Of a DNA stretch of 64,000 bases, positions 3,443 to 58,454 are shown one piece after another. The first letter of the stretch is position 1. Every line of letters begins with the position of its first letter. The DNA comes from Malacoraja senta (Eukaryota): the NCBI GenBank assembly GCA_038087875.1, contig CM075977.1, positions 271,250,001 through 271,314,000 on the forward strand, read 5' to 3'. The notes below the pieces were generated by a model that was given only the letters and a program-made list of their open reading frames with translations, did not search any database and was not told the DNA's origin. Both the position numbers and the translations under genes were made by a program.

Positions 3443-3478
3443 GGCACTGGGTCTGTACTCGCTGGAATTTATAAGAAT

Positions 3479-4333
3479 ACAATACAATTTATTTGTCTTT
3501 TGGACAAATTTGTCATATGGGCCCCGTTGAGGTCCAAACGAAATGTCGTTTCTGCAGCCATACATTACAAAACGAAGAAGACCCGAGACACAACACAATT
3601 TACACATACATCCATCACAGCGCTGTGATGGAAGGCAAAAAAACGTATCTCTCCACTGCACTCCCCCCCCCCCGATGTCAGAGTCAAAGTCAAAGCCCCC
3701 GGCGGGCGATGGTGATTGTCCCACGGCCATTAAAGCCACGCCGGTTAATGCAGGGTCGCGCACTGGGTCTTGGTGTTAGAGCCCCGGCGCGCGCTCGCAA
3801 AGTCCGGCGGCCATTCCAAGCCGCGCGGGGGGATAAAGCCCCGCTCCAGGTGCTCTTCAACCTCGCAACTCGGGCGGGAGAAGTCGCCGCTGCGGAAGCC
3901 CCGAAAAGCGGTCTCCCACTAGGGGACCCGCGGGCTTCCGGTGTTGCTGTCCGCCAGACCCGCGGTTGTAGCCTCCGAATCTCCGGGGGTCGGGTAGCAG
4001 CAGCGATTGTCTCCACTACAGCTCCACCCGCTCCGGACTCGCTCAGCCCCGCGACGGTGAGTAGTCCGCAGCTCCGCAACTGGAGCCCCAGGTCGTTCCT
4101 GCTGGAGGCCGCTCCACGTTGCCCAGCCCCAACGACAACGGAGACCCGACAAAGAAAAGGTCGGGTCTCCCGTGCAGGGGAAAGATTTTAAAGTTCCCCC
4201 CCCCCCACCCCCACCCTCCCACACACATACCCCGACAAAAAAAAAAAAAAACTACATAAAAACGAGACAAAAATAATAAAAAGACAGACGGACTGCAGAG
4301 GCCGCTGCAAACGAGAGTCGCGCCGCCCACCGA
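3479..4333 (-). mobile_element. GC-rich non-autonomous retroelement (SINE-like), copy A
   Basis: TSD AAGAAT at 3473-3478 and 4334-4339 inside the CR1. Minus-strand layout: GC leader, T-rich tract, G-run, GC-rich body, AATAAA plus (TATTG)n tail. Confidence 0.75.
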
Positions 4334-34800: not shown

Positions 34801-36177
34801 ACTCTACAGCAGGACTGGTTCAGGTGTGGAGACTTGTTAGTTGTCCTCGGCAGTATGTCAGCAAAAACAAATTAAACAACTGTGTGAATTTAGCTATTGC
34901 ATGATGGCAGAAGTAAAATAAGGTGGAACATGTAGAAGCCCAGAAAATATTTTGGCTAAAGACCCCTACACCTTCCCCATAAAGCATGTCCAGCTCAATT
35001 AATTGCAGAGTCCATGAGTCTTACATTGGCCTCACCAGCCAGTTCAGCATCCAGAAATGTTGGAAAGGCCAGGATGTGAAATTGAAGTAAAGTGAGGATT
35101 CAAGTCAAAATGGTTTAGGTTGGGTGATTAGACGATTGGGTCAAGCAGATCTCGCTGTGGCAAACACTAGTGAACATATGTAATAAGAACAGCTGGGAAC
35201 GGCCAAATTACAGGCCTGTAAGTCTACTGTCAGCAGTGGGGAAATAATTGGAAAAAAAATGAGGGACAAGATTAATCTGTACTTGTGATGGCCGGGATTA
35301 GTCAAAGATGGTCGGAATGGTTTTATTCAGAGGAAATTTTCTGTGACTAATTTGATTGATTTTTTTGTTGAAATTATAGATATCTTTTGAAGCTACAGAA
35401 ATGGATTGATGAGGGTGTTGCAACTGATGTAGTCTACATGGATTTCAGTAAGGCCTTTGACAAGGTCACATGTGGGAGACAAGTGCTAAAGATTAGGGTC
35501 CATGGGATGCAGCACTAGTTGACATAGTTGGTAATAGGATTCAACAGAGACCAATGATAGAGGACTGTTCTTGTGATTGGAAGTCTATGGTCAATGGTGA
35601 ATGGTCGGGGCTAGGTGTTGGGACTCTTCATGTTCATTATATGCAATAACCTTTTCGATATGAATGCAGGAGGTATGGCATGAAAAACAGTTGTTGTTGG
35701 CAAAGATAATCATAGGCTATAGGGTGATATTGATCAGTTGATAAGATGGACATAGGAAAGCAGGTGTAACTTGTGGCAGATGATTGGAAGGAAAGTAAAG
35801 AGAGGAAACTAGTTCTGCCTTTCATAGGAGTGAACCTAAGTACATACATCGGACTTTTATATTTAAGAATTTAATGGCAGCTTGTTCGTATGTAAGGTGT
35901 CCATGTCAGGTGTTCATAAACCCAGGAATGGGCTGTAGCAGGGAGGTTATGGTAGAGGTTTACAAAGCATCTGTTGGATCTTATCTTATACTGTAGTTCT
36001 GGGTATTGCACTCTGGGAAGGATGTGATTGTACTGGAGAGGGTGCTGCTGAGATGCTTCAGGATGTTGCTGGGGTTGGAACATTTCAGTTTTGAGGAGAG
36101 ACTGGCTAGGTTGGATTATGTTTTTAACGTGGAATGGAGAAGGCTGAGGGGGGGAAAAACAGAGGTATACAAAATTT

Positions 36178-36959
36178 TGGATTAAAGAAAACAAGTTTGT
36201 GATTTCTGCGAATCTTCACGGTGGATCGTTTTTTGCCGGTTATCCTTACGATGACTTGAAACATCAACAATCAGAAGGGTACTGCAGTAAGGCCCCCGTG
36301 GATGAAGTATTCAAATACCTGGCCAAGACCTATGCTTCCAGGTACCCTGTGATGAAAACTGGCACTGGTACAGCAGGCAGTGAAGAAAGCGAATGGCATG
36401 TTGGCTTTCATAACAAGAGGAGGAGTATAGGAGCAAACAGGTCCTTCTGTAGCTGTACAGGGCCCTAGTGAGACCACACCTGGAGTATTGTGTGCAGTTT
36501 TGGTCTCCAAATTTGAGGAAGGACATTCTTGCTATTGAGGGAATGCAGCGTAGGTTCACGAGGTTAATTCCCGGGATGGCGGGACTGTCATATGTTGATA
36601 GAATGGAGCGGCTGGGCTGGTATACTCTGGAATTTGGAAGGATGAGAGAGGATCTTATAGTAACATATAAGATTATGAAGGGTTTGGACACCCTAGAGGC
36701 AGGAAACATGTTCCCGATGTTGGGGGAGTCCAGAACCAGGGGCCACAGTTTAAAAATTAGGGGTAGGCCATTTAGAACAGAGATGAGGAAAACTTTTTCT
36801 GTGGAATTCTCTGCCTCAGAAGGCAGTAGAGGCCAATTCTCTGGATGCTTTCAAGAGAGAGTCAGATAGAGCTCCTGCACCTATTACCTATTGTCACACT
36901 GCAGTGACTCACCTTAGGAAGTATTCCCTGATGGGACCACCAATGGAGAGAGGTGGTAC
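36178..36959 (+). pseudogene. CPD: Carboxypeptidase D (M14 domain I) fragment, split by a CR1 insertion (parts 36178-36366 and 36897-36959)
   Basis: Part 1 reads WIKENKFVISANLHGGSFFAGYPYDDLKHQQSEGYCSKAPVDEVFKYLAKTYASRYPVMKTG. Part 2 reads HCSDSP*EVFPDGTTNGERWY. Human CPD (recalled) reads [26 protein letters not shown]...DDEVFKYLAKAYASNHPIMKTGEPHCPGDEDETFKDGITNGAHWY. In-frame TAG at 36915. Confidence 0.85.
36367..36895 (+). mobile_element. Younger CR1 3' fragment inserted into the CPD fragment
   Basis: ORF 36468-36869 RPHLEYCVQFWSPNLRKDILAIEG...; (CTATTGT)-type tail. Confidence 0.85.
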
Positions 36960-37824
36960 CAGCACAGAAGAAAACTGCATGCTGAGGTCAAGAGAAGAGA
37001 GCCAGTTAAAACCGGACATGCAAGAGGCCGCCGCAAAGAAGTGTGAGTCCGGTGGCCGAAGTGACCATTAGGAATAAGGAGAGAGAGTTAGATTTAGCTC
37101 TTAGGGCTAAAGGAATCAAGGGATATGGGAAAAAAGCAGGAACGGGGTACTGATTTTAAATGATCAGCCATGATCATATTGAATGATGGTGCTGACTCGA
37201 AGGGCCAAATGGCCTACTCCTGCACCTATTTTTCTATGTTTCTATGTTTTTCTATGAGGACGGGCAGGACGGACGAGGATCGCAGAGAACAAAGAGGAGA
37301 GGGTGTCGGGTCGGACTTACCTGGATGGTGGGAGCTCCAGGACTTCCCACACGTGGGCTGGACTTTGGACTGTTTGTGTTTTCGTTTTCTTTTTCTTTTT
37401 TTTTAAACGGTGGCAAATTTGTGGCGACAGAGCATTTGTGGTTGTGTAAAAGAATTTCACTGTACTGTGCATACATGTCAATAAAGAACCATTGAACCAT
37501 TATGAGAGGCATATATTGGGTAGGTAGTTGGAAACTTCTCCCCATAGCAGAGATACCTAAAACTGGAGGCATATGTTGAGGGCAAAAGATAAGAAGTTTA
37601 GAGAGGATCTGAGGAAGTACTTTCTCATCTAGGGTGTGGTTAGAATGTGGATTGCACTCCCTCAGTGGGTAATGAAGTTATCTCACATTTAAGACGCCCT
37701 TGAATTGTCAGGGCTTAGAAGAATTCAGACCAAGTGCTGGTAAATGGGAGTAGACATCTATACTAGGTATAGATACAGTGAGCCAAAGGCCTCTTTTTCT
37801 GTGTTGTATGATTCTCTGATTAAG

Positions 37825-40076
37825 CAGGGCTGCCAACATTGAGTGAGAGTTGAGAGTGAAAAATTGCAAGGGAGTGTAGCGACCGAGGGGGGGAGGGTGT
37901 GGGAGGGGGGTATCCCCCCTCCACTGTAGGGAGCTCTTGCATTTTTCAGCTTGAAATTATGCAATCTGGAGCATACTGTAGCAAGTCTTTTAACTTACAC
38001 TTGAATGCAACATTTATGCTTCAAATTGGATTAGGTATGAATAAGGTTATGCTAAATTACATTCCTAATTACATTCCACAGTAGAGCCAGGCTCTGATGA
38101 ACAGGTGCAGCACATGAATGACCTTAGTATATTCATGCATAGAAATCAGATTATAATTCATGCTGTTATGCATATATATATATAGAGAGAGAAAAAACAT
38201 AGAAACCAGGCAAGAGGAGTCAGACTTCCGTCACTGTTCTGCACAAATAAATTAATCAACTTTACCCTTTGACTATAGAAACAAGGCAAAAATAATGCCA
38301 CATGTTCAACCGTATATGGTTCAATGAAATTAAGATATATATGTAAAACATATATATGGAAACAGGCCCTTCGGCCCACCAAGTCCACAACGACAAGCAA
38401 TCTACCATACAACAGTTATATCCTACATGCCAGGGACAATTTACAAAAGCCAATTAACCTACAAACCTGCACTTCTTTCGGATGTGGGAGAAACCAGAAT
38501 ATCCAGAGAAAACCCATGTGGTCTCCATAGGGAGAATGCACAAATACTGTACAGACAGCACCCATAGTCAGGATCAAATCTGGGTCTGTGGTGCTGTAAG
38601 GCAGTGACTCTACCGCTGCGCCACCGTGCCACCCCATTAAATTATTTTTGCTGTATCATATTTATTATGGTGTCATGTCAATAAAGATGAACACATGATT
38701 CTGATTTCTGCCCTTAGTTGGATAACACACATCTCCAGTCATTTTGTTTTATGGCTGGTTTTCAACCTCTTCAGTCTGAAGGTCTCGACCCAAAACATCA
38801 CCTATTCTTTCTCTTCAGAGATGCTGCCTGTCCTGCTGAGTTATTCAGCTTTTTGTGTCTATCTTCAGTTTAAACCACCATCTGCAGTTCCTCCCTACAC
38901 TCTTTGTTAAGCGAAACAGGTCCTATTCTCATAATATTATTCAGCTCAACTAAATCTTTTCTTCACCTCCGTTGCTGCAGAGAATACAATCCCAGTTATC
39001 AAATCTTTCCTCAAAGTGAAAAAAGGATCCAGCCCTTCCAAACTCTTCATAAATCGCCCTCTGGATCCTCTCCAGAGCAATTGCACCCTTTCTACAATGT
39101 GTCATCGTCTTACAGCATGGAAACAGGCCTTTCATCCCAATTTGTCCATGCAGATCAAGATGCCCCATCTAAACTAGTCCCATTTATCCGCATTTGGCCC
39201 ATATCCCTTTAAGCCTTGTGTGGGTCAGTGTAAGGGTGTGTATCAGTGTGTGTTAGGTTGTGTGTGAGAGTGTGTGTTAGGTTGTGTGTGAGAGTGTGTG
39301 TCAGTGAAGCGGCGACAACACCCGGAGTGAGCGGAGACTTGGCGATGTCTGGGGAACGTTTCCCTCCCACCCCCCCCCCCCCGGGAATGCGGGCCGACCC
39401 AGGAGCTCTGTGTCCAGCTGGGGTCCGGGGGAGAGGTGAGGGACAGTGACCCGGGGGTTGGGCATCGGAGCGGAGCCTTAGCCAGAGATTTATCCCCGCG
39501 GCTCCGGAGGTGGCACCAACACGACGCCCCTCACACGCCCTCTCCACTCCTGGCTCCGGGTCAGGGTTACAACTCCATGGAGTGTGGACAGAGCGGCCGC
39601 CGGACACAGAGCCGCCGGAGGTGAGGGTGGGAGGTGTGAGCGGTGCCCCAGCCAGGGGTCGGTGCTGGGTCCACCGCTGTGTCTCACCTATCACACCATC
39701 TGCATGGGAATTTGAATGCGGGTGAGGCAGCATCTATAGAGCGGTAGACAAAAATGCTGGAGAAATGCTTGAGTCTGAAGAAGGGTCAAACTCAGACATA
39801 GATGCTGCCTCACCCGCTGAGTTTTTCCATCATTTTTGTCTACATTGCCATTTTAAATAGTGTGCGATGGGCTTAAGCCAATCAAATTGCTTGTTCTTTA
39901 CGGGAAACCCACCAACAGAAAACTATACTTATTGGTGAGTGTGGAGGAGTGTGCGTTTATTTATTTATTTATTTATTAAAAATTGAGCGTGAGAACTTCT
40001 GTCATCAGCGTGAGAGCGTGAGAATTTCATGAAATGCGTGAGTCTCGCGCTCAATGCGTAAGAGTTGGCAGCCCTG
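37825..40076. mobile_element. Non-autonomous DNA transposon with 7-bp TSD (P- or hAT-like, superfamily uncertain), containing nested SINE, CR1 and Penelope pieces
   Basis: TIRs CAGGGCTGCCAAC and GTTGGCAGCCCTG; GATTAAG duplicated at 37818-37824 and 40077-40083. Confidence 0.75.
38355..38635 (-). mobile_element. V-SINE (HE1-like)
   Basis: Matches the SINE consensus within the window. Confidence 0.8.
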
Positions 40077-42873: not shown

Positions 42874-45800
42874 ATTGTGATCCAACACTTTACCTGAGCT
42901 GCACCAACAAGAATAGAAGCAGATTAAGCTCAATCTGTATATTTTTATCCCCTATTTAAGAGCAAACCAAATTCTGGACTAGAATGGCACTGAAAAGGGT
43001 GCTTTTGTATTTTGCAGGTCCCTTAGGAAATAATTTCCTTTATTGGCTTGACAGTTAAAGTGCCTACACATTATGAAAGCTGGATTTTCTTCACAATTAC
43101 ATGCGATAATCACACATTACACATACTTTCAAATTGGTGCAAACTTATTTGTGCAATCTTCTGCCATGGTGAGAGCTTTGATGCACATTTATAATGATGT
43201 GAGGAACGACTGCTTCTGGCTGTTGGGTTGATTTGGGGCTGTTTTTATTTTGTTGCTGGAATAGAAATGGGATCAAAACTGCGTACGTCTCTGGCAGACA
43301 TTGAGATAAAATGGCATCCATGATACATACCTGGGCAAGGAACTCTCAGGACACTACCAACTACTTCTCCCTACCATCCACTCGCATGAAAGAAAAGGTA
43401 TTGCGTTGCAACATAGGAGACACTGAGACCATCACAAAGGTTTTGATCTGTTGTTAAAGATTCCAGATAGTAGTTAAGTTAGGAATGGATCCATTGTCAT
43501 GTGCTGCCTTCCTCCTGAGGTATATGCATTCACAGAGAATCATGGTGCAATTTACTCAGTGTCCACACAGAAGAGCTGATTGGTTTTGGTAATTGATTTC
43601 CAATTTCAAATCCATCATATTGCATGTAAAAAACACATGCTAAGTGATAGAATTTCTAGCATAACATCTCTTGTGGCTATAACTTGTAGCTTGCAGCAAT
43701 GAAGCAACTGTTTTCTATCATGCATTTTTAATCTTGGAGAGATTTCAACAATCTTTGGCAAACTACAATCTCTGTCTCCCTGGTAACAATAAACTTTTGA
43801 TTTGTGTTAAGCAAGAAGCATCGGCCAATCAGGGCAACAGAAGGCTAAATGTTGTCATTATTTCAAATACTTATTTACTATACAGTATATTATAAAATTG
43901 CTACTCAGAACACTCTGGTCTCAACATTAACTCACAATAAACTTTGACTTATTTCTCTCCATTCCTTTCTGGAACAAAACATAGACTTGACAGAAAATAA
44001 GATTTTATGTTTATCTAGGGTACAGTTTTCCACTGGTGATGACAGCAATATGGCCACAAAGGCTTTGCTTCTGATCAGTAACCTTCATCTTTATTTGTGA
44101 TTCGACCATTCACTGGGAAGGGGAGGGAAATCAGTTTCATTGCACGCTCTGCTAAATTCTCTAAATGTCATTATGTATACAGTCAGCTGACACCAGAAAT
44201 GTATAGATGTGGCTATTCTCTACACCACTGGAATTTGTGGTTGTACCGTCAGCGGCAGAAGAGTGTTCGACCTAAGATGTTAACTTTGGTTCTCCTTCCA
44301 AGAATGCTGCCTGACATCCAGGGCCGGATTTAAGTATAAGTTTGACAAACTTAAGCTTATGGCCTCGAGATCTAGGGGGGCCTCGCAGAGCCGGATTTAC
44401 CACTAGGCTTCATAGGCTGAAGCGTAGGGCCTCAAAATCTAGGCGGCCTCCGGCCAAGACAGGACACCTGCTGTTCAACTCTGGGCGGGCCCCCTCCCTA
44501 TCTCTCTCTCTCTGTCACTCTCCGTCTCCGCCGGGTCTCCGCTCTCCACTCGCTCCTCATCCGCCGGCACGGCAGGCCGCCTTGCACATGCGCACTGCTA
44601 CGGCCAGCACATTCTACCCCTACACATGCGCACAACCACAGCCAGCACATCATCGGCCGCCCTGCACATGCGCACTGCCACGGAAACTGGTCGGAGCTGG
44701 GCACTTTCTCCCTCGCTTTGAATTGTGAGAGATCTGGCCGCCATTGCTATCCAGTAGCCACCTCGCCGCGACCGCTGAAAACCAACGCAGAATTACTCCC
44801 TGACCCTGGATCTGGAGTAGCTCCCTGGAGTAACTCTTGCTTCTGGTCTCCTGGTCCTCCATAAATATTTTAAATGGAATTTAAACTAGAGGTGGTGGAG
44901 GGCTGAACAATAACAGCCTATTGCATTTTATCTGTTTATTTATTGTGTATATATATATATGGTCTATGGTATATAAACACACTGAACTTTTATCTCCTGT
45001 TCTGTATTATGTTTACATATTCTGTTGTGCTGCAGCAAGCAAGAATTTCATTGTCCTATCTGGGACACATGACAATAAAACTCTCTTGACTCTTGACTTG
45101 GACTTAAGCAAAAAAGGGTTCTTGGGGAAAAAAGAGGTACCTTAAATTTAGTTGCATCTGGTTGGGTAACTATGGTAGGGTGATGACTATTCCATGCGTT
45201 ATTTGTGCGGGCGAACTCCATGGAGCAGCCAGCAACTCTGGATAGAAGAAATTGGGTGACGTTTCAATAGACAATAGACAAGTGTTTTTAGTTTAATTTA
45301 AAGATACAGCGTGGAAACAGGCCCTTTGGCCCACCGAGTCTACGCCGACCATTGATCACCCGTACACTAGTTCTATCCCACACATTAGCGGAGTAAGTCA
45401 AGAGTCAAGAGTGTTTTATTCTCTCACGTCCCAGTTAGAACAATGAAATTCTTACTTGCAGCAGCACAACAGAATATGTAAACATAGTACTCTGTAAACA
45501 ATGTTATAAACGAGAAAACAAAACAGTGTATNNNNNNNNNNNNNNNNNNNNNNNNNNNNNNNNNNNNNNNNNNNNNNNNNNNNNNNNNNNNNNNNNNNNN
45601 NNNNNNNNNNNNNNNNNNNNNNNNNNNNNNNNNNNNNNNNNNNNNNNNNNNNNNNNNNNNNNNNNNNNNNNNNNNNNNNNNNNNNNNNNNNNNNNNNNNN
45701 NNNNNNNNNNNNNNNNNNNNNNNNNNNNNNNNNNNTTCTATCGTATAGTATCGTGTGTGTAGGAAGGAACTGCAGATGCTGGTTTAAACTGAAGATAGAC

Positions 45801-48800
45801 ACAAACAACTGAAGTAACTCAACAGGTCAGACAGAATCTCTGGACAAAAGGAAAATATTACGTTTTGTGTTGGGTGTGAAATAGGTTCCTGCACACCTTT
45901 GGAATGTGGAAGGAAACAAGAGCACCCGGAGAAAACCCATGCGATCAAAGGGAAAAGGAGCAAACTCTATACAGACAGCACCCATATTCAGGATCAATTC
46001 CGGGTCTCTGGCACTTTTAGGCAGCAACTTTATGGCCAATGTACTGCCCCATAGTCTTGAACTTAATTAAAACATACAGTAGCTGTAAAGGGGGACATAG
46101 CATCACTTGGAGATTTAAAACTGAAAATGGATAGTTATTTTTTCAGTAACCAAAGTTATCAACGTATAATTTTTTGTGTGTTGGAAAACAAAATATAGTG
46201 GCACAGCTGGTAGACTTGCTGCCTCACACGCCAGAGATCTGTGTTCGATCCTGTCCTCGGGCACTGTCTGCGTTTAATTTGCACATTCTCCCTGCAAGGG
46301 TGTGGGTTTCCGCCCACATCCCAAAGACGCATTGGCTTTGTAGGTTAACTTGTCTCTGTAAAATTGCCCCTAATGTGTAGGGAGTGTGTGAGGAAAGTGG
46401 GATAACAGAAGTTGTGTGAATGGGGAGACAAAAATGCTGGAGAAACTCAGCGGGTTAAGCAGCATCTATGGAGCGAAGGAAATAGGCGATGTTTCGGGTC
46501 GAGACCCTTCTTCAGACTGATGTGAGGGTGGGGGTGCGGGAAGAAGAAAGGAAGAGTCGGAGACAGTGGGCTGAGGGAGAGCTGGGAAGGGGAGGAGAAA
46601 GCAGAGATTACCTGAAATTGAAGTAGTCAATGTTCATACCGCTGGGGTGTAAACTGCCCAAGCGAAATATGAGGTGCTGCTCCTCTAATTTATGGTGGGC
46701 CTCACTCTGGCCATGGAAGAGGCCCAGGACAGAAAGGTCGGATTCGGAATGGGGGGGGGGGGGAGTTGAAGTACTGAGCCACCGGGAGATCAGGTTGGTT
46801 ATTGCGGACCGAGCGGAGGTGTTGGGCGAAGCGATCGCCAAGCGTACGCTTGGTCTCACCGATGTAGAGCAGCTGACACCTAGAGCAGTGGATGCAATAG
46901 ATGAGGTTGGAGGAGGTGCAGGTGAACCTCTGCCGCACCCGGAAAGACTGCTTAGGTCCTTGAATGGAGTCAAGGGAGGAGGTAAAGCAACAAGTGTAGC
47001 ATTTCCTGCAGTTGCAAGGGAAAGTGCCAGGAGAGGGGGTGGTNNNNNNNNNNNNNNNNNNNNNNNNNNNNNNNNNNNNNNNNNNNNNNNNNNNNNNNNN
47101 NNNNNNNNNNNNNNNNNNNNNNNNNNNNNNNNNNNNNNNNNNNNNNNNNNNNNNNNNNNNNNNNNNNNNNNNNNNNNNNNNNNNNNNNNNNNNNNNNNNN
47201 NNNNNNNNNNNNNNNNNNNNNNNNNNNNNNNNNNNNNNNNNNNATTGTGATCCAACACTTTACCTGAGCTGCACCAACAAGAATAGAAGCAGATTAAGCT
47301 CAATCTGTATATTTTTATCCCCTATTTAAGAGCAAACCAAATTCTGGACTAGAATGGCACTGAAAAGGGTGCTTTTGTATTTTGCAGGTCCCTTAGGAAA
47401 TAATTTCCTTTATTGGCTTGACAGTTAAAGTGCCTACACATTATGAAAGCTGGATTTTCTTCACAATTACATGCGATAATCACACATTACACATACTTTC
47501 AAATTGGTGCAAACTTATTTGTGCAATCTTCTGCCATGGTGAGAGCTTTGATGCACATTTATAATGATGTGAGGAACGACTGCTTCTGGCTGTTGGGTTG
47601 ATTTGGGGCTGTTTTTATTTTGTTGCTGGAATAGAAATGGGATCAAAACTGCGTACGTCTCTGGCAGACATTGAGATAAAATGGCATCCATGATACATAC
47701 CTGGGCAAGGAACTCTCAGGACACTACCAACTACTTCTCCCTACCATCCACTCGCATGAAAGAAAAGGTATTGCGTTGCAACATAGGAGACACTGAGACC
47801 ATCACAAAGGTTTTGATCTGTTGTTAAAGATTCCAGATAGTAGTTAAGTTAGGAATGGATCCATTGTCATGTGCTGCCTTCCTCCTGAGGTATATGCATT
47901 CACAGAGAATCATGGTGCAATTTACTCAGTGTCCACACAGAAGAGCTGATTGGTTTTGGTAATTGATTTCCAATTTCAAATCCATCATATTGCATGTAAA
48001 AAACACATGCTAAGTGATAGAATTTCTAGCATAACATCTCTTGTGGCTATAACTTGTAGCTTGCAGCAATGAAGCAACTGTTTTCTATCATGCATTTTTA
48101 ATCTTGGAGAGATTTCAACAATCTTTGGCAAACTACAATCTCTGTCTCCCTGGTAACAATAAACTTTTGATTTGTGTTAAGCAAGAAGCATCGGCCAATC
48201 AGGGCAACAGAAGGCTAAATGTTGTCATTATTTCAAATACTTATTTACTATACAGTATATTATAAAATTGCTACTCAGAACACTCTGGTCTCAACATTAA
48301 CTCACAATAAACTTTGACTTATTTCTCTCCATTCCTTTCTGGAACAAAACATAGACTTGACAGAAAATAAGATTTTATGTTTATCTAGGGTACAGTTTTC
48401 CACTGGTGATGACAGCAATATGGCCACAAAGGCTTTGCTTCTGATCAGTAACCTTCATCTTTATTTGTGATTCGACCATTCACTGGGAAGGGGAGGGAAA
48501 TCAGTTTCATTGCACGCTCTGCTAAATTCTCTAAATGTCATTATGTATACAGTCAGCTGACACCAGAAATGTATAGATGTGGCTATTCTCTACACCACTG
48601 GAATTTGTGGTTGTACCATCAGCGGCAGAAGAGTGTTCGACCTAAGATGTTAACTTTGGTTCTCCTTCCAAGAATGCTGCCTGACATCCAGGGCCGGATT
48701 TAAGTATAAGTTTGACAAACTTAAGCTTATGGCCTCGAGATCTAGGGGGGCCTCGCAGAGCCGGATTTACCACTAGGCTTCATAGGCTGAAGCGTAGGGC

Positions 48801-51404
48801 CTCAAAATCTAGGCGGCCTCCGGCCAAGACAGGACACCTGCTGTTCAACTCTGGGCGGGCCCCCTCCCTATCTCTCTCTCTCTGTCACTCTCCGTCTCCG
48901 CCGGGTCTCCGCTCTCCACTCGCTCCTCATCCGCCGGCACGGCAGGCCGCCTTGCACATGCGCACTGCTACGGCCAGCACATTCTACCCCTACACATGCG
49001 CACAACCACAGCCAGCACATCATCGGCCGCCCTGCACATGCGCACTGCCACGGAAACTGGTCGGAGCTGGGCACTTTCTCCCTCGCTTTGAATTGTGAGA
49101 GATCTGGCCGCCATTGCTATCCAGTAGCCACCTCGCCGCGACCGCTGAAAACCAACGCAGAATTACTCCCTGACCCTGGATCTGGAGTAGCTCCCTGGAG
49201 TAACTCTTGCTTCTGGTCTCCTGGTCCTCCATAAATATTTTAAATGGAATTTAAACTAGAGGTGGTGGAGGGCTGAACAATAACAGCCTATTGCATTTTA
49301 TCTGTTTATTTATTGTGTATATATATATGGTCTATGGTATATAAACACACTGAACCTTTATCTCCTGTTCTGTATTATGTTCACATATTCTGTTGTGCTG
49401 CAGCAAGCAAGAATTTCATTGTCCTACCTGGGACACATGACAATAAAACTCTCTTGACTCTTGACTTGGACTTAAGCAAAAAAGGGTTCTTGGGGAAAAA
49501 AGAGGTACCTTAAATTTAGTTGCATCTGGTTGGGTAACTATGGTAGGGTGAAGACTATTCCATGCGTTATTTGTGCGGGCGAACTCCATGGAGCAGCCAG
49601 CAACTCTGGATAGAAGAAATTGGGTGACGTTTCAATAGACAATAGACAAGTGTTTTTAGTTTAATTTAAAGATACAGCGTGGAAACAGGCCCTTTGGCCC
49701 ACCGAGTCTACGCCGACCATTGATCACCCGTACACTAGTTCTATCCCACACATTAGCGGAGTAAGTCAAGAGTCAAGAGTGTTTTATTCTCTCACGTCCC
49801 AGTTAGAACAATGAAATTCTTACTTGCAGCAGCACAACAGAATATGTAAACATAGTACTCTGTAAACAATGTTATAAACGAGAAAACAAAACAGTGTATA
49901 TTTATATNNNNNNNNNNNNNNNNNNNNNNNNNNNNNNNNNNNNNNNNNNNNNNNNNNNNNNNNNNNNNNNNNNNNNNNNNNNNNNNNNNNNNNNNNNNNN
50001 NNNNNNNNNNNNNNNNNNNNNNNNNNNNNNNNNNNNNNNNNNNNNNNNNNNNNNNNNNNNNNNNNNNNNNNNNNNNNNNNNNNNNNNNNNNNNNNNNNNN
50101 NTCTATCGTATAGTATCGTGTGTGTAGGAAGGAACTGCAGATGCTGGTTTAAACTGAAGATAGACACAAACAACTGGAGTAACTCAACAGGTCAGACAGA
50201 ATCTCTGGACAAAAGGAAAATATTACGTTTTGGGTTGGGTGTGAAATAGGTTCCTGCACACCTTTGGAATGTGGAAGGAAACAAGAGCACCCGGAGAAAA
50301 CCCATGCGATCAAAGGGAAAAGGAGCAAACTCTATACAGACAGCACCCATATTCAGGATCAATTCCGGGTCTCTGGCACTTTTAGGCAGCAACTTTATGG
50401 CCAATGTACTGCCCCATAGTCTTGAACTTAATTAAAACATACAGTAGCTGTAAAGGGGACATAGCGTCACTTGGAGATTTAAAACTGAAAATGGATAGTT
50501 ATTTTTTCAGTAACCAAAGTTATCAACGTATAATTTTTGTGTGTTGGAAAACAAATATAGTGGCACAGCTGATAGACTTGCTGCCTCACACGCCAGAGAT
50601 CTGTGTTCGATCCTGTCCTCGGGCACTGTCTGCGTTTAATTTGCACATTCTCCCTGCAAGGGTGTGGGTTTCCTCCCACATCCCAAAGACGCATGGCTTT
50701 GTAGGTTAACTTGTCTCTGTAAAATTGCCCCTAATGTGTAGGGAGTGGGTGAGGAAAGTGGGATAACAGAAGTTATGTGAATGGGTAGACAAAATGCTGG
50801 AGAAACTCAGCGGGTTAAGCAGCATCTATGGAGCGAAGGAAATAGGCGATGTTTCGGGTCGAGACCCTTCTTCAGACTGATGTGAGGGTGGGGGGCGGGA
50901 AGAAGAAAGGAAGAGGCGGAGACAGTGGGCTGAGGGAGAGCTGGGAAGGGGAGGAGAAAGCAGAGATTACCTGAAATTGAAGTAGTCAATGTTCATACCG
51001 CTGGGGTGTAAACTGCCCAAGCGAAATATGAGGTGCTGCTCCTCTAATTTATGGTGGGCCTCACTCTGGCCATGGAAGAGGCCCAGGACAGAAAGGTCGG
51101 ATTCGGAATGGGGGGGGGGGGGGGGAGTGGAAGTACTGAGCCACCGGGAGATCAGGTTGGTTATTGCGGACCGAGCGGAGGTGTTGGGCGAAGCGATCGC
51201 CAAGCCTACTCTTGGTCTCACCGATGTAGAGCAGCTGACACCTAGAGCAGTGGATGCAATAGATGAGGTTGGAGGAGGTGCAGGTGAACCTCTGCCGCAC
51301 CCGGAAAGACTGCTTAGGTGCTTGAATGGAGTCAAGGGAGGAGGTAAAGCAACAAGTATAGCATTTCCTGCAGTTGCAAGGAAAGTGCCAGGAGAGGGGG
51401 TGGT
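42874..51404. repeat. Tandem segmental duplication (42874-47043 vs 47244-51404), separated by an N gap
   Basis: Offset 4370 bp. I saw no differences over roughly the first 1.3 kb, then scattered SNPs and indels. Both copies have an N gap at the same microsatellite. Confidence 0.9.
46425..47043 (-). mobile_element. Penelope-like GIY-YIG fragment with hammerhead repeat (duplicate copy)
   Basis: FTCTSSNLIYCIHCSRCQLLYIGETKR...LEEQHLIFRLGSLHPSGMNIDY. Confidence 0.85.
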
Positions 51405-58258: not shown

Positions 58259-58454
58259 GAGTACATGATCATCAGCATGAAAAAATTATCACCATATCAG
58301 AGGATGGGTCTGTGCAGAGTCCACGATTTCCTCAGAGTTATCCTCGGGATGTTGTGCTGGTGTGGAGGCTAATAGCAGCTGATGACAATATGCAAATTCA
58401 ACTCACCTTCGATCAAAGGTTTGGACTTGAGGAACCCGAGAACGGACTTTGCAA
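58259..58454 (+). CDS. PDGFC: Internal coding exon (exon 2 equivalent, N-terminal half of the CUB domain) of a PDGF-C or PDGF-C-like gene
   Basis: Acceptor ttaaattAG|GA (AG at 58257-58258, phase 1) and donor TGCAA|GTGAGT (GT at 58455, phase 2). Peptide (G)VHDHQHEKIITISEDGSVQSPRFPQSYPRDVVLVWRLIAADDNMQIQLTFDQRFGLEEPENGLCK aligns without gaps to human PDGF-C GVQDPQHERIITVSTNGSIHSPRFPHTYPRNTVLVWRLVAVEENVWIQLTFDERFGLEDPEDDICK (recalled; about 43/66 identical by hand). Orthologue versus paralogue is not resolved. Confidence 0.88.

What the first reader, a model, noticed from the sequence alone, without database searches (positions are those of the whole stretch)
36178..37500. Spliced CPD mRNA fragment fused to the tail of a GC-rich non-autonomous retroelement: possible host-gene capture by a SINE-like family
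Seen: a CPD domain-I fragment that includes the zinc-ligand motif NLHGG. It is followed (36963-37500, once two later CR1 pieces are removed) by a GC-rich segment with GAGAACAAAGAGGA, CTGGACTTT and a tail AAGAATTTCACTGTAC...TGTCAATAAAGAACCATTGAACCATT. These motifs recur in GC-rich copies B and C. The whole block interrupts an older CR1 that resumes at about 37499, so it appears to have arrived as one unit. Knowledge (recalled): human CPD has an intron within the Lys codon of [11 protein letters not shown], yet here WIKENK runs straight into FVISAN, which implies an RNA intermediate. Inference: either a one-off template-switch chimera or a mobile subfamily that carries a CPD fragment.
Basis: partly seen in the sequence, partly recalled or inferred. 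Interest (0 to 1): 0.8.

Follow-up and report, generated by a model that had tools for sequence, protein, structure and literature searches.

The report
Dead CPD-exon/retroelement chimeric retrocopy
A decayed, single-copy fragment of spliced carboxypeptidase D mRNA sits fused to the front of an abundant short retroelement; it is a one-off accident of reverse transcription, a known kind of event, and not a gene-carrying mobile family.

Summary
Window 36178-36366 plus 36897-36958 is a pseudogenised piece of the host carboxypeptidase D gene, domain I, including ANLHGG. The parent gene lies on contig C6.

- **Spliced origin.** The piece starts with the last 10 nt of parent exon 1, joined directly to exon 2. 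Transcript contigs of related species carry the identical 18-nt junction, so an RNA intermediate is shown.
- **Fusion partner.** The piece abuts a nearly 5'-complete, internally deleted copy of an abundant non-autonomous retroelement of about 610 bp. That family has GC-rich 35-bp monomers at its 5' end, no tRNA/5S/7SL head, and a tail AATAAA(GAACCATT)n.
- **One insertion.** The block splits an older CR1-like LINE at a single point, with no loss of target sequence. Two CR1 fragments (36367-36896 and 37075-37256) were inserted into it later.
- **Single copy.** Genome-wide, the CPD piece exists only here and in the parent gene. The "mobile CPD-carrying subfamily" reading is refuted.
- **Not read-through.** The parent gene region holds no copy of the family, so a read-through transcript is not supported.

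Best reading: a one-off bipartite chimeric retrocopy, probably made by template switching of a reverse transcriptase. An RNA-level fusion before reverse transcription cannot be excluded. It is a new example of a known phenomenon, with modest interest.

The parts
35387..36177 (+). Older CR1-like LINE, 5' part. RT motif near 35387; C-terminal ORF2 region ending ...EVYKI(L). This is the target of the chimeric insertion.
   Evidence: ORFs. Collinear with nested CR1 #1 across the insertion point. Base 36177 (T) cannot be assigned.
36178..36187 (+). Last 10 nt of host CPD exon 1 (TGGATTAAAG).
   Evidence: Identical to L017:1294-1303, which is followed by the donor GTGAAC. Identical to the loose ends of the relatives' transcript contigs.
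36188..36366 (+). CPD exon 2-derived sequence, first part. Includes ANLHGG, which holds the zinc-ligand His.
   Evidence: 83% identity to C6:683197-683375. Alignments. PDB best hit Carboxypeptidase D.
36367..36896 (+). Nested CR1-like fragment #1, a later insertion. It is 5'-truncated and has an internal deletion near its 3' end.
   Evidence: It interrupts homology to parent exon 2. CR1-type ORF2 C-terminus in ORF 36468-36869. Boundaries are good to about 3 nt.
36897..36958 (+). CPD exon 2-derived sequence, second part. It carries a TAG stop (DSP*EV) and ends 11 nt before the exon's donor site.
   Evidence: 81% identity to C6:683381-683442. Alignment. Exon 2 end at L002:1757.
36959..36997 (+). 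39-nt junction segment of uncertain origin. It resembles a 5' monomer of the family and is collinear with it.
   Evidence: About 72% identity to monomers by eye, but not significant in a shuffle test (P = 0.25). No match in the CPD gene region.
36998..37074 (+). 5' region of the GC-rich non-autonomous retroelement family.
   Evidence: An nhmmer profile built from 12 other copies gives 34.4 bits, E 6e-10, running contiguously across nested CR1 #2.
37075..37256 (+). Nested CR1-like fragment #2, a later insertion. It is a short 3' end with a (TTTCTATG)n tail.
   Evidence: It interrupts the family profile alignment. Sequence read. Boundaries are good to about 2 nt.
37257..37501 (+). Body and tail of the retroelement family. 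An internal deletion of about 165-215 nt lies near 37295-37330. The tail AATAAAGAACCATTGAACCATT is at 37480-37501.
   Evidence: 75-85% identity to at least 40 scored copies. Alignments. Tail comparison.
37502..37830 (+). Older CR1-like LINE, 3' part. It resumes with ATGAGAGG (MRG...).
   Evidence: Collinear with the 5' part when compared with CR1 #1.

Best explanation
This is a single, old, dead bipartite chimeric retrocopy made in one retrotransposition event.

**Proposed sequence of events (inferred).**
1. A tail-specific LINE reverse transcriptase primed at a nick in an older CR1-like element. It copied the RNA of a roughly 610-nt non-autonomous GC-rich retroelement from its AATAAA(GAACCATT)n tail almost to its 5' end.
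2. The enzyme then switched template onto a spliced carboxypeptidase D mRNA, inside exon 2 and 11 nt before that exon's end.
3. It copied about 245 nt of exon 2 and 10 nt of exon 1, then stopped.
4. The cDNA was joined to the target with no more than 3 nt of target duplication.

**Afterwards.** The copy decayed to 83% identity with the parent and acquired a TAG stop. It was split by two CR1 insertions.

**Shown:** the spliced mRNA origin, the fusion to the family, the single insertion point and the single copy number.
**Inferred:** that the fusion arose by template switching during reverse transcription.
For: - **Parent gene.** It is a three-domain M14 gene at C6:675-713 kb. Its exon 2 best matches PDB Carboxypeptidase D domain I, E 3e-37.
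- **Splice junction.** Exon 1 ends TGGATTAAAG|gt, and exon 2 begins after ...cctgtag. The window has the two joined. The 18-nt junction TGGATTAAAGAAAACAAG is identical to that in 1.8-6.2 kb contigs of relatives. Those contigs cover exactly exon 2 and run on into exon 1 and exon 3 sequence.
- **Fusion to the family.** CPD homology ends at 36958. A family profile aligns from 36998, with its envelope from 36978, through to the tail once CR1 #2 is removed, E 6e-10.
- **Near-complete 5' end.** Other copies begin within the same 35-bp monomer zone and have unrelated upstream flanks. The window's copy is therefore almost 5'-complete at the junction.
- **One insertion point.** The flanks of the old CR1 are collinear, with no loss and no second break. 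The CPD piece has no 3' end, poly(A) or tail of its own.
- **No source locus in the gene.** No family copy was found anywhere in C6:674.6-736.5 kb.
- **Copy number.** The CPD piece occurs only in the window and in the parent gene.
- **Independent assembly.** A contig of the same species (run X15, about the same depth as the parent gene) reproduces the CR1-to-CPD junction.
- **Precedent.** mRNA/LINE-1, U6/L1 and MGL chimeras are documented (bioRxiv 10.1101/2025.02.02.635956; PMC2104539).
Against: - Template switching leaves no unique signature. Microhomology at the junction is at most 1 nt.
- The 39 nt between the CPD part and the confidently aligned family part cannot be assigned (P = 0.25).
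- If a 7-nt deletion is allowed, the CPD part ends with CCAG, which is exactly the end of exon 2. That would fit a splice-mediated fusion instead.
- There is no clear target-site duplication to prove one integration. At most 3 nt (ATT) are duplicated, and these are indistinguishable from the tail unit.
- The partner LINE was not identified.
Confidence: 0.6

Rival explanations
1. The two RNAs were fused before reverse transcription, and the chimeric RNA was then retrotransposed through the element's tail. Three routes are possible. CPD exon 2 could have been cis-spliced to an intronic copy of the element. It could have been trans-spliced to an element transcript. Or a cleaved CPD mRNA fragment could have been ligated to the 5' end of the element RNA.
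For: With a 7-nt deletion, the CPD part would end ...TGGTA-CCAG, which is the exact 3' end of exon 2. By my own estimate, a match of 4 nt or more to the exon end arises by chance with P of about 0.005. Sense-oriented mRNA/LINE-1 chimeras in human often show splice-site or ligation features (10.1101/2025.02.02.635956).
Against: No copy of the family exists in the present CPD gene region, C6:674.6-736.5 kb. Without an assumed deletion, the junction lies 11 nt inside the exon. The CCAG is equally explained as part of a family monomer (CACCAGTGCAG). Trans-splicing and ligation cannot be tested from sequence.
Confidence: 0.25
2. Two independent or DNA-level events. Either the retroelement inserted first and a CPD cDNA fragment later landed exactly at its 5' edge, or both cDNAs were captured during repair of one double-strand break.
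For: There is no unambiguous target-site duplication around the block. A 39-nt segment at the junction remains unassigned.
Against: The CPD piece has no tail, poly(A) or mRNA 3' end that a LINE enzyme could prime on. The old CR1 is broken at one point only, with no loss. Both parts have the same orientation, and their decay is broadly similar: 83% identity to the parent against 75-85% to other copies.
Confidence: 0.08
3. A mobile subfamily of the retroelement carries the CPD fragment as a captured 5' module.
For: None found. The window's copy groups with a minority of copies that have the long 5' region (L004, L005, L007, L012).
Against: Whole-genome DNA searches with both CPD pieces give only the window and the parent exon. 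The six-frame Pfam M14 search finds no other isolated fragment.
Confidence: 0.02

Closest known systems
Bipartite chimeric retrogenes / mRNA-LINE-1 and U6-L1 chimeras of mammals (Buzdin-type; catalogued in bioRxiv 10.1101/2025.02.02.635956)
   Same: The 5' part is copied from a cellular RNA and the 3' part from a retroelement with its own 3' end. Both parts are in sense orientation, the mRNA part has no introns, and there is one integration. Template switching, RNA ligation and splicing are the accepted candidate mechanisms.
   Different: Here the 3' partner is a short non-autonomous element with an AATAAA(GAACCATT)n tail. It is not an L1 with poly(A), and there is no 7-20 bp duplication of the L1 type. 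The mRNA part is an internal, 5'-truncated fragment and does not include a first exon. The host appears to be a cartilaginous fish.
MGL-LINE / Mg-SINE / WEIRD chimeras of Magnaporthe grisea (PMC2104539)
   Same: They show that LINEs other than L1, and their SINEs, form chimeras with cellular transcripts by template jumps.
   Different: Those chimeras are recurrent (33 bipartite elements) and switch at a preferred consensus site. Here there is a single locus, and no preferred site could be assessed.
SVA elements with a spliced MAST2 5' transduction (recalled from the literature, not checked here)
   Different: That subfamily has many copies sharing one junction. The CPD junction occurs once.
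Classical processed pseudogene
   Same: It has a spliced mRNA origin, and it is decayed and non-functional.
   Different: It has no poly(A) and no mRNA 3' end. It covers only about 255 nt of a transcript that encodes three M14 domains, and it depends on the retroelement's tail for integration.

Membership tests
Bipartite chimeric retrocopy (cellular RNA fused 5' to a retroelement 3' part) | Two parts derived from different RNAs, joined directly in the same orientation | tested here: met
   The CPD part runs to 36958 and the family profile starts at 36998. Both are on the + strand. 39 nt between them are unassigned.
Bipartite chimeric retrocopy (cellular RNA fused 5' to a retroelement 3' part) | The cellular part is copied from processed (spliced) RNA | tested here: met
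   The exon 1 / exon 2 junction is present without the 7.3-kb intron. It is identical to the junction in the relatives' transcript contigs.
Bipartite chimeric retrocopy (cellular RNA fused 5' to a retroelement 3' part) | The 3' part ends with the retroelement's own 3' terminus at the target boundary | tested here: met
   The tail AATAAAGAACCATTGAACCATT abuts the resumed CR1 at 37501/37502. Eleven other copies end the same way.
Bipartite chimeric retrocopy (cellular RNA fused 5' to a retroelement 3' part) | One target-site duplication flanks the whole chimera | tested here: inconclusive
   The target is collinear with no loss. The possible duplication is at most 3 nt (ATT) and cannot be told from the tail unit.
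Bipartite chimeric retrocopy (cellular RNA fused 5' to a retroelement 3' part) | The two source sequences are not neighbours in the genome (not a read-through transcript) | tested here: met
   No family copy in C6:674.6-736.5 kb, which spans the CPD gene.
Mobile retroelement subfamily carrying a host exon | Several copies at different loci share the same host-to-element junction | tested here: not met
   Only the window and the parent exon match. There is no other isolated M14 fragment.
L1-type processed pseudogene | Poly(A) tail, mRNA 3' end and a 7-20 bp target-site duplication | tested here: not met
   The CPD part ends inside exon 2 and is followed by the retroelement. There is no A-run and no long duplication.
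Classical SINE (the retroelement family) | 5' head derived from tRNA, 5S or 7SL with an internal Pol III promoter | tested here: not met
   Rfam at E <= 1 gives no such match in three long copies. ARAGORN finds nothing in six copies. All 11 copies examined have runs of four or more T about 100-118 nt before the 3' end; these would terminate Pol III, which is an inference.
Classical SINE (the retroelement family) | Short, non-coding, many copies, with a 3' tail shared with a partner LINE | tested here: inconclusive
   The family is about 610 bp with variable 5' truncation and 541-709 first-look candidates. The tail stem motif is shared with other GC-rich families in the window.
Carboxypeptidase D (M14B), as a functional gene copy | Intact reading frame covering a complete M14 domain | tested here: not met
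   Only about 85 codons of domain I are present. There is a TAG stop, a 3-nt gap and a CR1 insertion.

The most novel reading that the evidence does not exclude
The enzyme that moves this GC-rich, non-tRNA retroelement family recognises the family's specific tail and should therefore not make ordinary processed pseudogenes. It may nevertheless fuse host mRNA fragments to the 5' ends of its elements repeatedly. In that case, chimeras of this kind would be a regular route for exon retroposition in cartilaginous-fish genomes, and this locus would be the first one recognised.
Probability: 0.1. Interest if true: 0.5.

Novelty: new member of a known kind. Interest (0 to 1): 0.3.

Why it matters
The locus is a clean, well-documented example showing that a retroelement system other than L1, with a tail-specific mechanism, can carry a spliced host mRNA fragment into the genome by fusion to the element's 5' end. 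It is a dead pseudogene and has no functional consequence here.

Its use is as a marker:
- It gives a dated, single-copy insertion for batoid phylogeny.
- It gives a reason to screen the several hundred copies of this family for further 5' chimeras.

It also helps to describe an unclassified family of about 610 bp that has 5' monomers and no Pol III head.

Tried and rejected
- **Read-through or cis-spliced source.** I blasted the de-interrupted block (word size 7) against 62 kb spanning the CPD gene. Only exon 2 matched.
- **Other CPD exons in the block.** None. The 39-nt junction piece is unlike exon 3, whose start is seen.
- **Copies of the family elsewhere in the window.** None.
- **The 39-nt junction segment as a family monomer.** The similarity is suggestive, but the shuffle test gives P = 0.25.
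- **A possible extra 5' head.** Loci L073, L074 and L080 share sequence upstream of the monomer. This turned out to be a kb-scale segmental or tandem repeat that merely contains a monomer fragment.
- **tRNA/5S/7SL head.** Rfam and ARAGORN were both negative.
- **Partner LINE.** A pattern search gave 133 exact tails, but no more genome letters could be fetched. It remains unidentified.
- **Sequencing runs holding the CPD-to-element junction.** None was listed, so expression of the chimera and its presence in other species remain untested.
- **8-of-9 nt resemblance.** The CPD mRNA just 5' of the copied part reads ATGGAGAGG, and the target just 3' of the insertion reads ATGAGAGG. I could not fit this into any integration model that gives the observed product, so I treat it as coincidence.

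Full report
**Anatomy.** All parts lie on the + strand (sequence).
- An older CR1-like LINE is broken between 36177 and 37502. It carries an RT motif near 35387, and its ORF2 C-terminus ends ...EVYKI.
- Compared with the homologous stretch of a nested CR1 (...ACATATAAGATTATGAAGG...), the two flanks (...GTATACAAAATT and ATGAGAGG...) are collinear. Nothing is lost, and at most ATT is duplicated.
- The inserted block is 36178-37501.
- Two younger CR1 fragments sit inside it, at 36367-36896 and about 37075-37256. Each interrupts an otherwise collinear alignment. Removing them leaves about 610 nt.
- Those 610 nt are 10 nt of CPD exon 1, about 241 nt of CPD exon 2, 39 unassigned nt, and about 320 nt of a repeat family ending in AATAAAGAACCATTGAACCATT.

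**The CPD fragment and its parent.**
- Window 36178-36366 reads WIKENKFVISANLHGGS...MKTGT. It passes the Pfam Peptidase_M14 cut-off.
- Its best match among solved structures is Carboxypeptidase D, 9j6z_A residues 213-274, E 3.2e-20.
- DNA searches of the whole assembly with either CPD piece return only the window itself and C6:683197-683442.
- That site is exon 2 (C6:683199-683453, 255 nt) of a gene whose M14 hits form three successive domains between 675 and 713 kb. This is the hallmark architecture of CPD.
- The exon's translation matches CPD domain I at E 3e-37. The next best structure scores 77 bits against 130.
- Against the spliced parent, the copy shows 208/251 identities (82.9%), a K2P distance of 0.196, a 3-nt gap and a GAG-to-TAG stop. 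It is a dead pseudogene.

**Evidence for splicing.**
- Parent exon 1 ends ...GAGAGGTGGATTAAAG, followed by the donor GTGAAC.
- Parent exon 2 begins GAAACAAG after the acceptor ...ttttcctgtag. The two exons are 7.3 kb apart.
- The window has TGGATTAAAG joined directly to AAAACAAG.
- When public runs were laid on the parent exon, contigs of 1.8-6.2 kb from three runs of related species covered exactly the exon. They continued upstream as ...GGCCATGGAGAGGTGGATTAAAGA and downstream into exon 3 sequence.
- The mRNA junction in those relatives, TGGATTAAAGAAAACAAG, is therefore identical to window 36178-36195 over 18 nt.
- The one difference from the host's own gene (GGA in the gene, GAA in the copy) is a change in the host gene. 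The relatives and the retrocopy share GAA. They also share T at L002:1674.
- The intron is phase 1, in the codon before Asn.
- A contig of the same species (run X15) reproduces the CR1-to-CPD junction at about the same depth as the parent gene.

**The retroelement.**
- The tail part matches many loci at 75-85% identity. The first look found 541 and 709 candidates for two queries, of which 40 were scored each time.
- The exact 22-nt tail occurs 133 times, against 0 for the reversed control.
- Copies end in AATAAA followed by two or three GAACCATT units, then unrelated flanks.
- Most copies are 5'-truncated, starting at scattered positions.
- The longest reach about 610 nt. They begin within a short array of GC-rich monomers of about 35 bp, preceded by unrelated sequence. 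This indicates a discrete, non-autonomous element and not the end of a long LINE.
- There is no tRNA, 5S or 7SL head.
- Every copy examined has T-runs about 100-118 nt before its end. I infer from this that Pol III transcription of the whole element is unlikely.
- The element fits the 'GC-rich non-tRNA SINE-like' description in earlier scan notes. I could not identify its partner LINE.

**The junction.**
- CPD homology stops at 36958, 11 nt before the exon 2 donor.
- A profile built from the 5' regions of 12 other copies aligns to 36998-37073 and continues without a break at 37255-37295 once CR1 #2 is removed (34.4 bits, E 6e-10).
- The rest of the body and the tail follow after an internal deletion of about 165-215 nt.
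- The 39 nt in between resemble a family monomer and are collinear with one, but not significantly so (P = 0.25).
- If they are a monomer, the element is almost 5'-complete at the junction.

**Mechanism.**
- The CPD piece has no 3' end, poly(A) or tail of its own. The target is broken once, and both parts are in sense orientation. A single integration through the element's tail is therefore the economical reading.
- The CPD gene region of 62 kb holds no copy of the family. This argues against a read-through or cis-spliced source RNA.
- I favour template switching of the reverse transcriptase from near the 5' end of the element RNA onto CPD mRNA, at about 0.6.
- An RNA-level fusion, by ligation or trans-splicing, is the main rival at about 0.25. 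It gains some weight because a 7-nt deletion would make the CPD part end exactly at the exon boundary (CCAG). The same four bases are equally expected from a family monomer.
- Two separate events or break-repair capture are unlikely, at about 0.08.
- A mobile CPD-carrying subfamily is contradicted by copy number.

**Comparison and verdict.**
- Chimeras of a cellular RNA with the 3' part of a LINE or SINE are established in mammals, as U6/L1 and mRNA/LINE-1 (10.1101/2025.02.02.635956), and in a fungus (PMC2104539). The same three candidate mechanisms are discussed there.
- This locus meets the defining features I could test. It differs mainly in its partner, a non-L1 element with a specific tail, and in its host.
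- It is a new member of a known kind, single-copy and non-functional. Interest is modest.

**Limits.**
- Other species' genomes could not be searched.
- No run holding the junction was listed.
- The family survey rests on about 60 loci.

Noticed in passing
L002:1503 (C6:683199) and L002:1674, against window 36188 and 36358: At the first base of exon 2 the host CPD gene has GGA (Gly). Transcript contigs of three related-species runs and the retrocopy all have GAA (Glu). The same pattern holds at L002:1674 (host C, relatives and retrocopy T). The retrocopy preserves ancestral states that the host gene has since changed.
   Followed up: partly
L017:1285-1293 against window 37502-37509: The CPD mRNA immediately 5' of the copied part reads ATGGAGAGG. 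The target DNA immediately 3' of the insertion reads ATGAGAGG, an 8-of-9 match. No integration model I tried turns this into the observed product, so it is possibly coincidence.
   Followed up: partly
window 44000-45530 and 48370-49898: A stretch of at least 1.5 kb is repeated at 99.5% identity 4,370 bp apart. Each copy ends at an N gap (45532-45735 and 49908-50101). This is either a recent tandem duplication or an assembly duplication around gaps. Each copy contains an inverted pair of a different SINE-like tail (AAGAATTTCATTG...GACAATAAAACTCT).
   Followed up: partly
window 3470-4330, - strand: Another strongly GC-rich, non-coding element with a different tail (...GACAAATAAATTGTATTGTATTC on the - strand). 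It is adjacent to a CR1 3' part. It belongs to the wider group of GC-rich SINE-like elements but not to the family studied here.
   Followed up: no
L073, L074, L080 (C3607:38-41 kb, C23:3.836-3.840 Mb, C13:11.321-11.324 Mb): kb-scale repeated arrays with 84-92% identity between loci and internal inverted and direct repeats. They contain one monomer fragment of the family and look like a satellite or segmental repeat that has absorbed a piece of the element.
   Followed up: partly
window 35387-37830: All five nested pieces lie in the same orientation: the old CR1-like LINE, the CPD fragment, the GC-rich element and the two later CR1 fragments. This may reflect an orientation bias inside a transcription unit. 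A PDGF-C-like exon was noted by the scan at 58259-58454.
   Followed up: no
L002:1711-1746 (run X15, record 4): A 312-nt contig of the same species matches only 36 nt of CPD exon 2 (the FPDGITNG region) and continues into unrelated sequence on both sides. It is probably an exon of an M14 paralogue.
   Followed up: no
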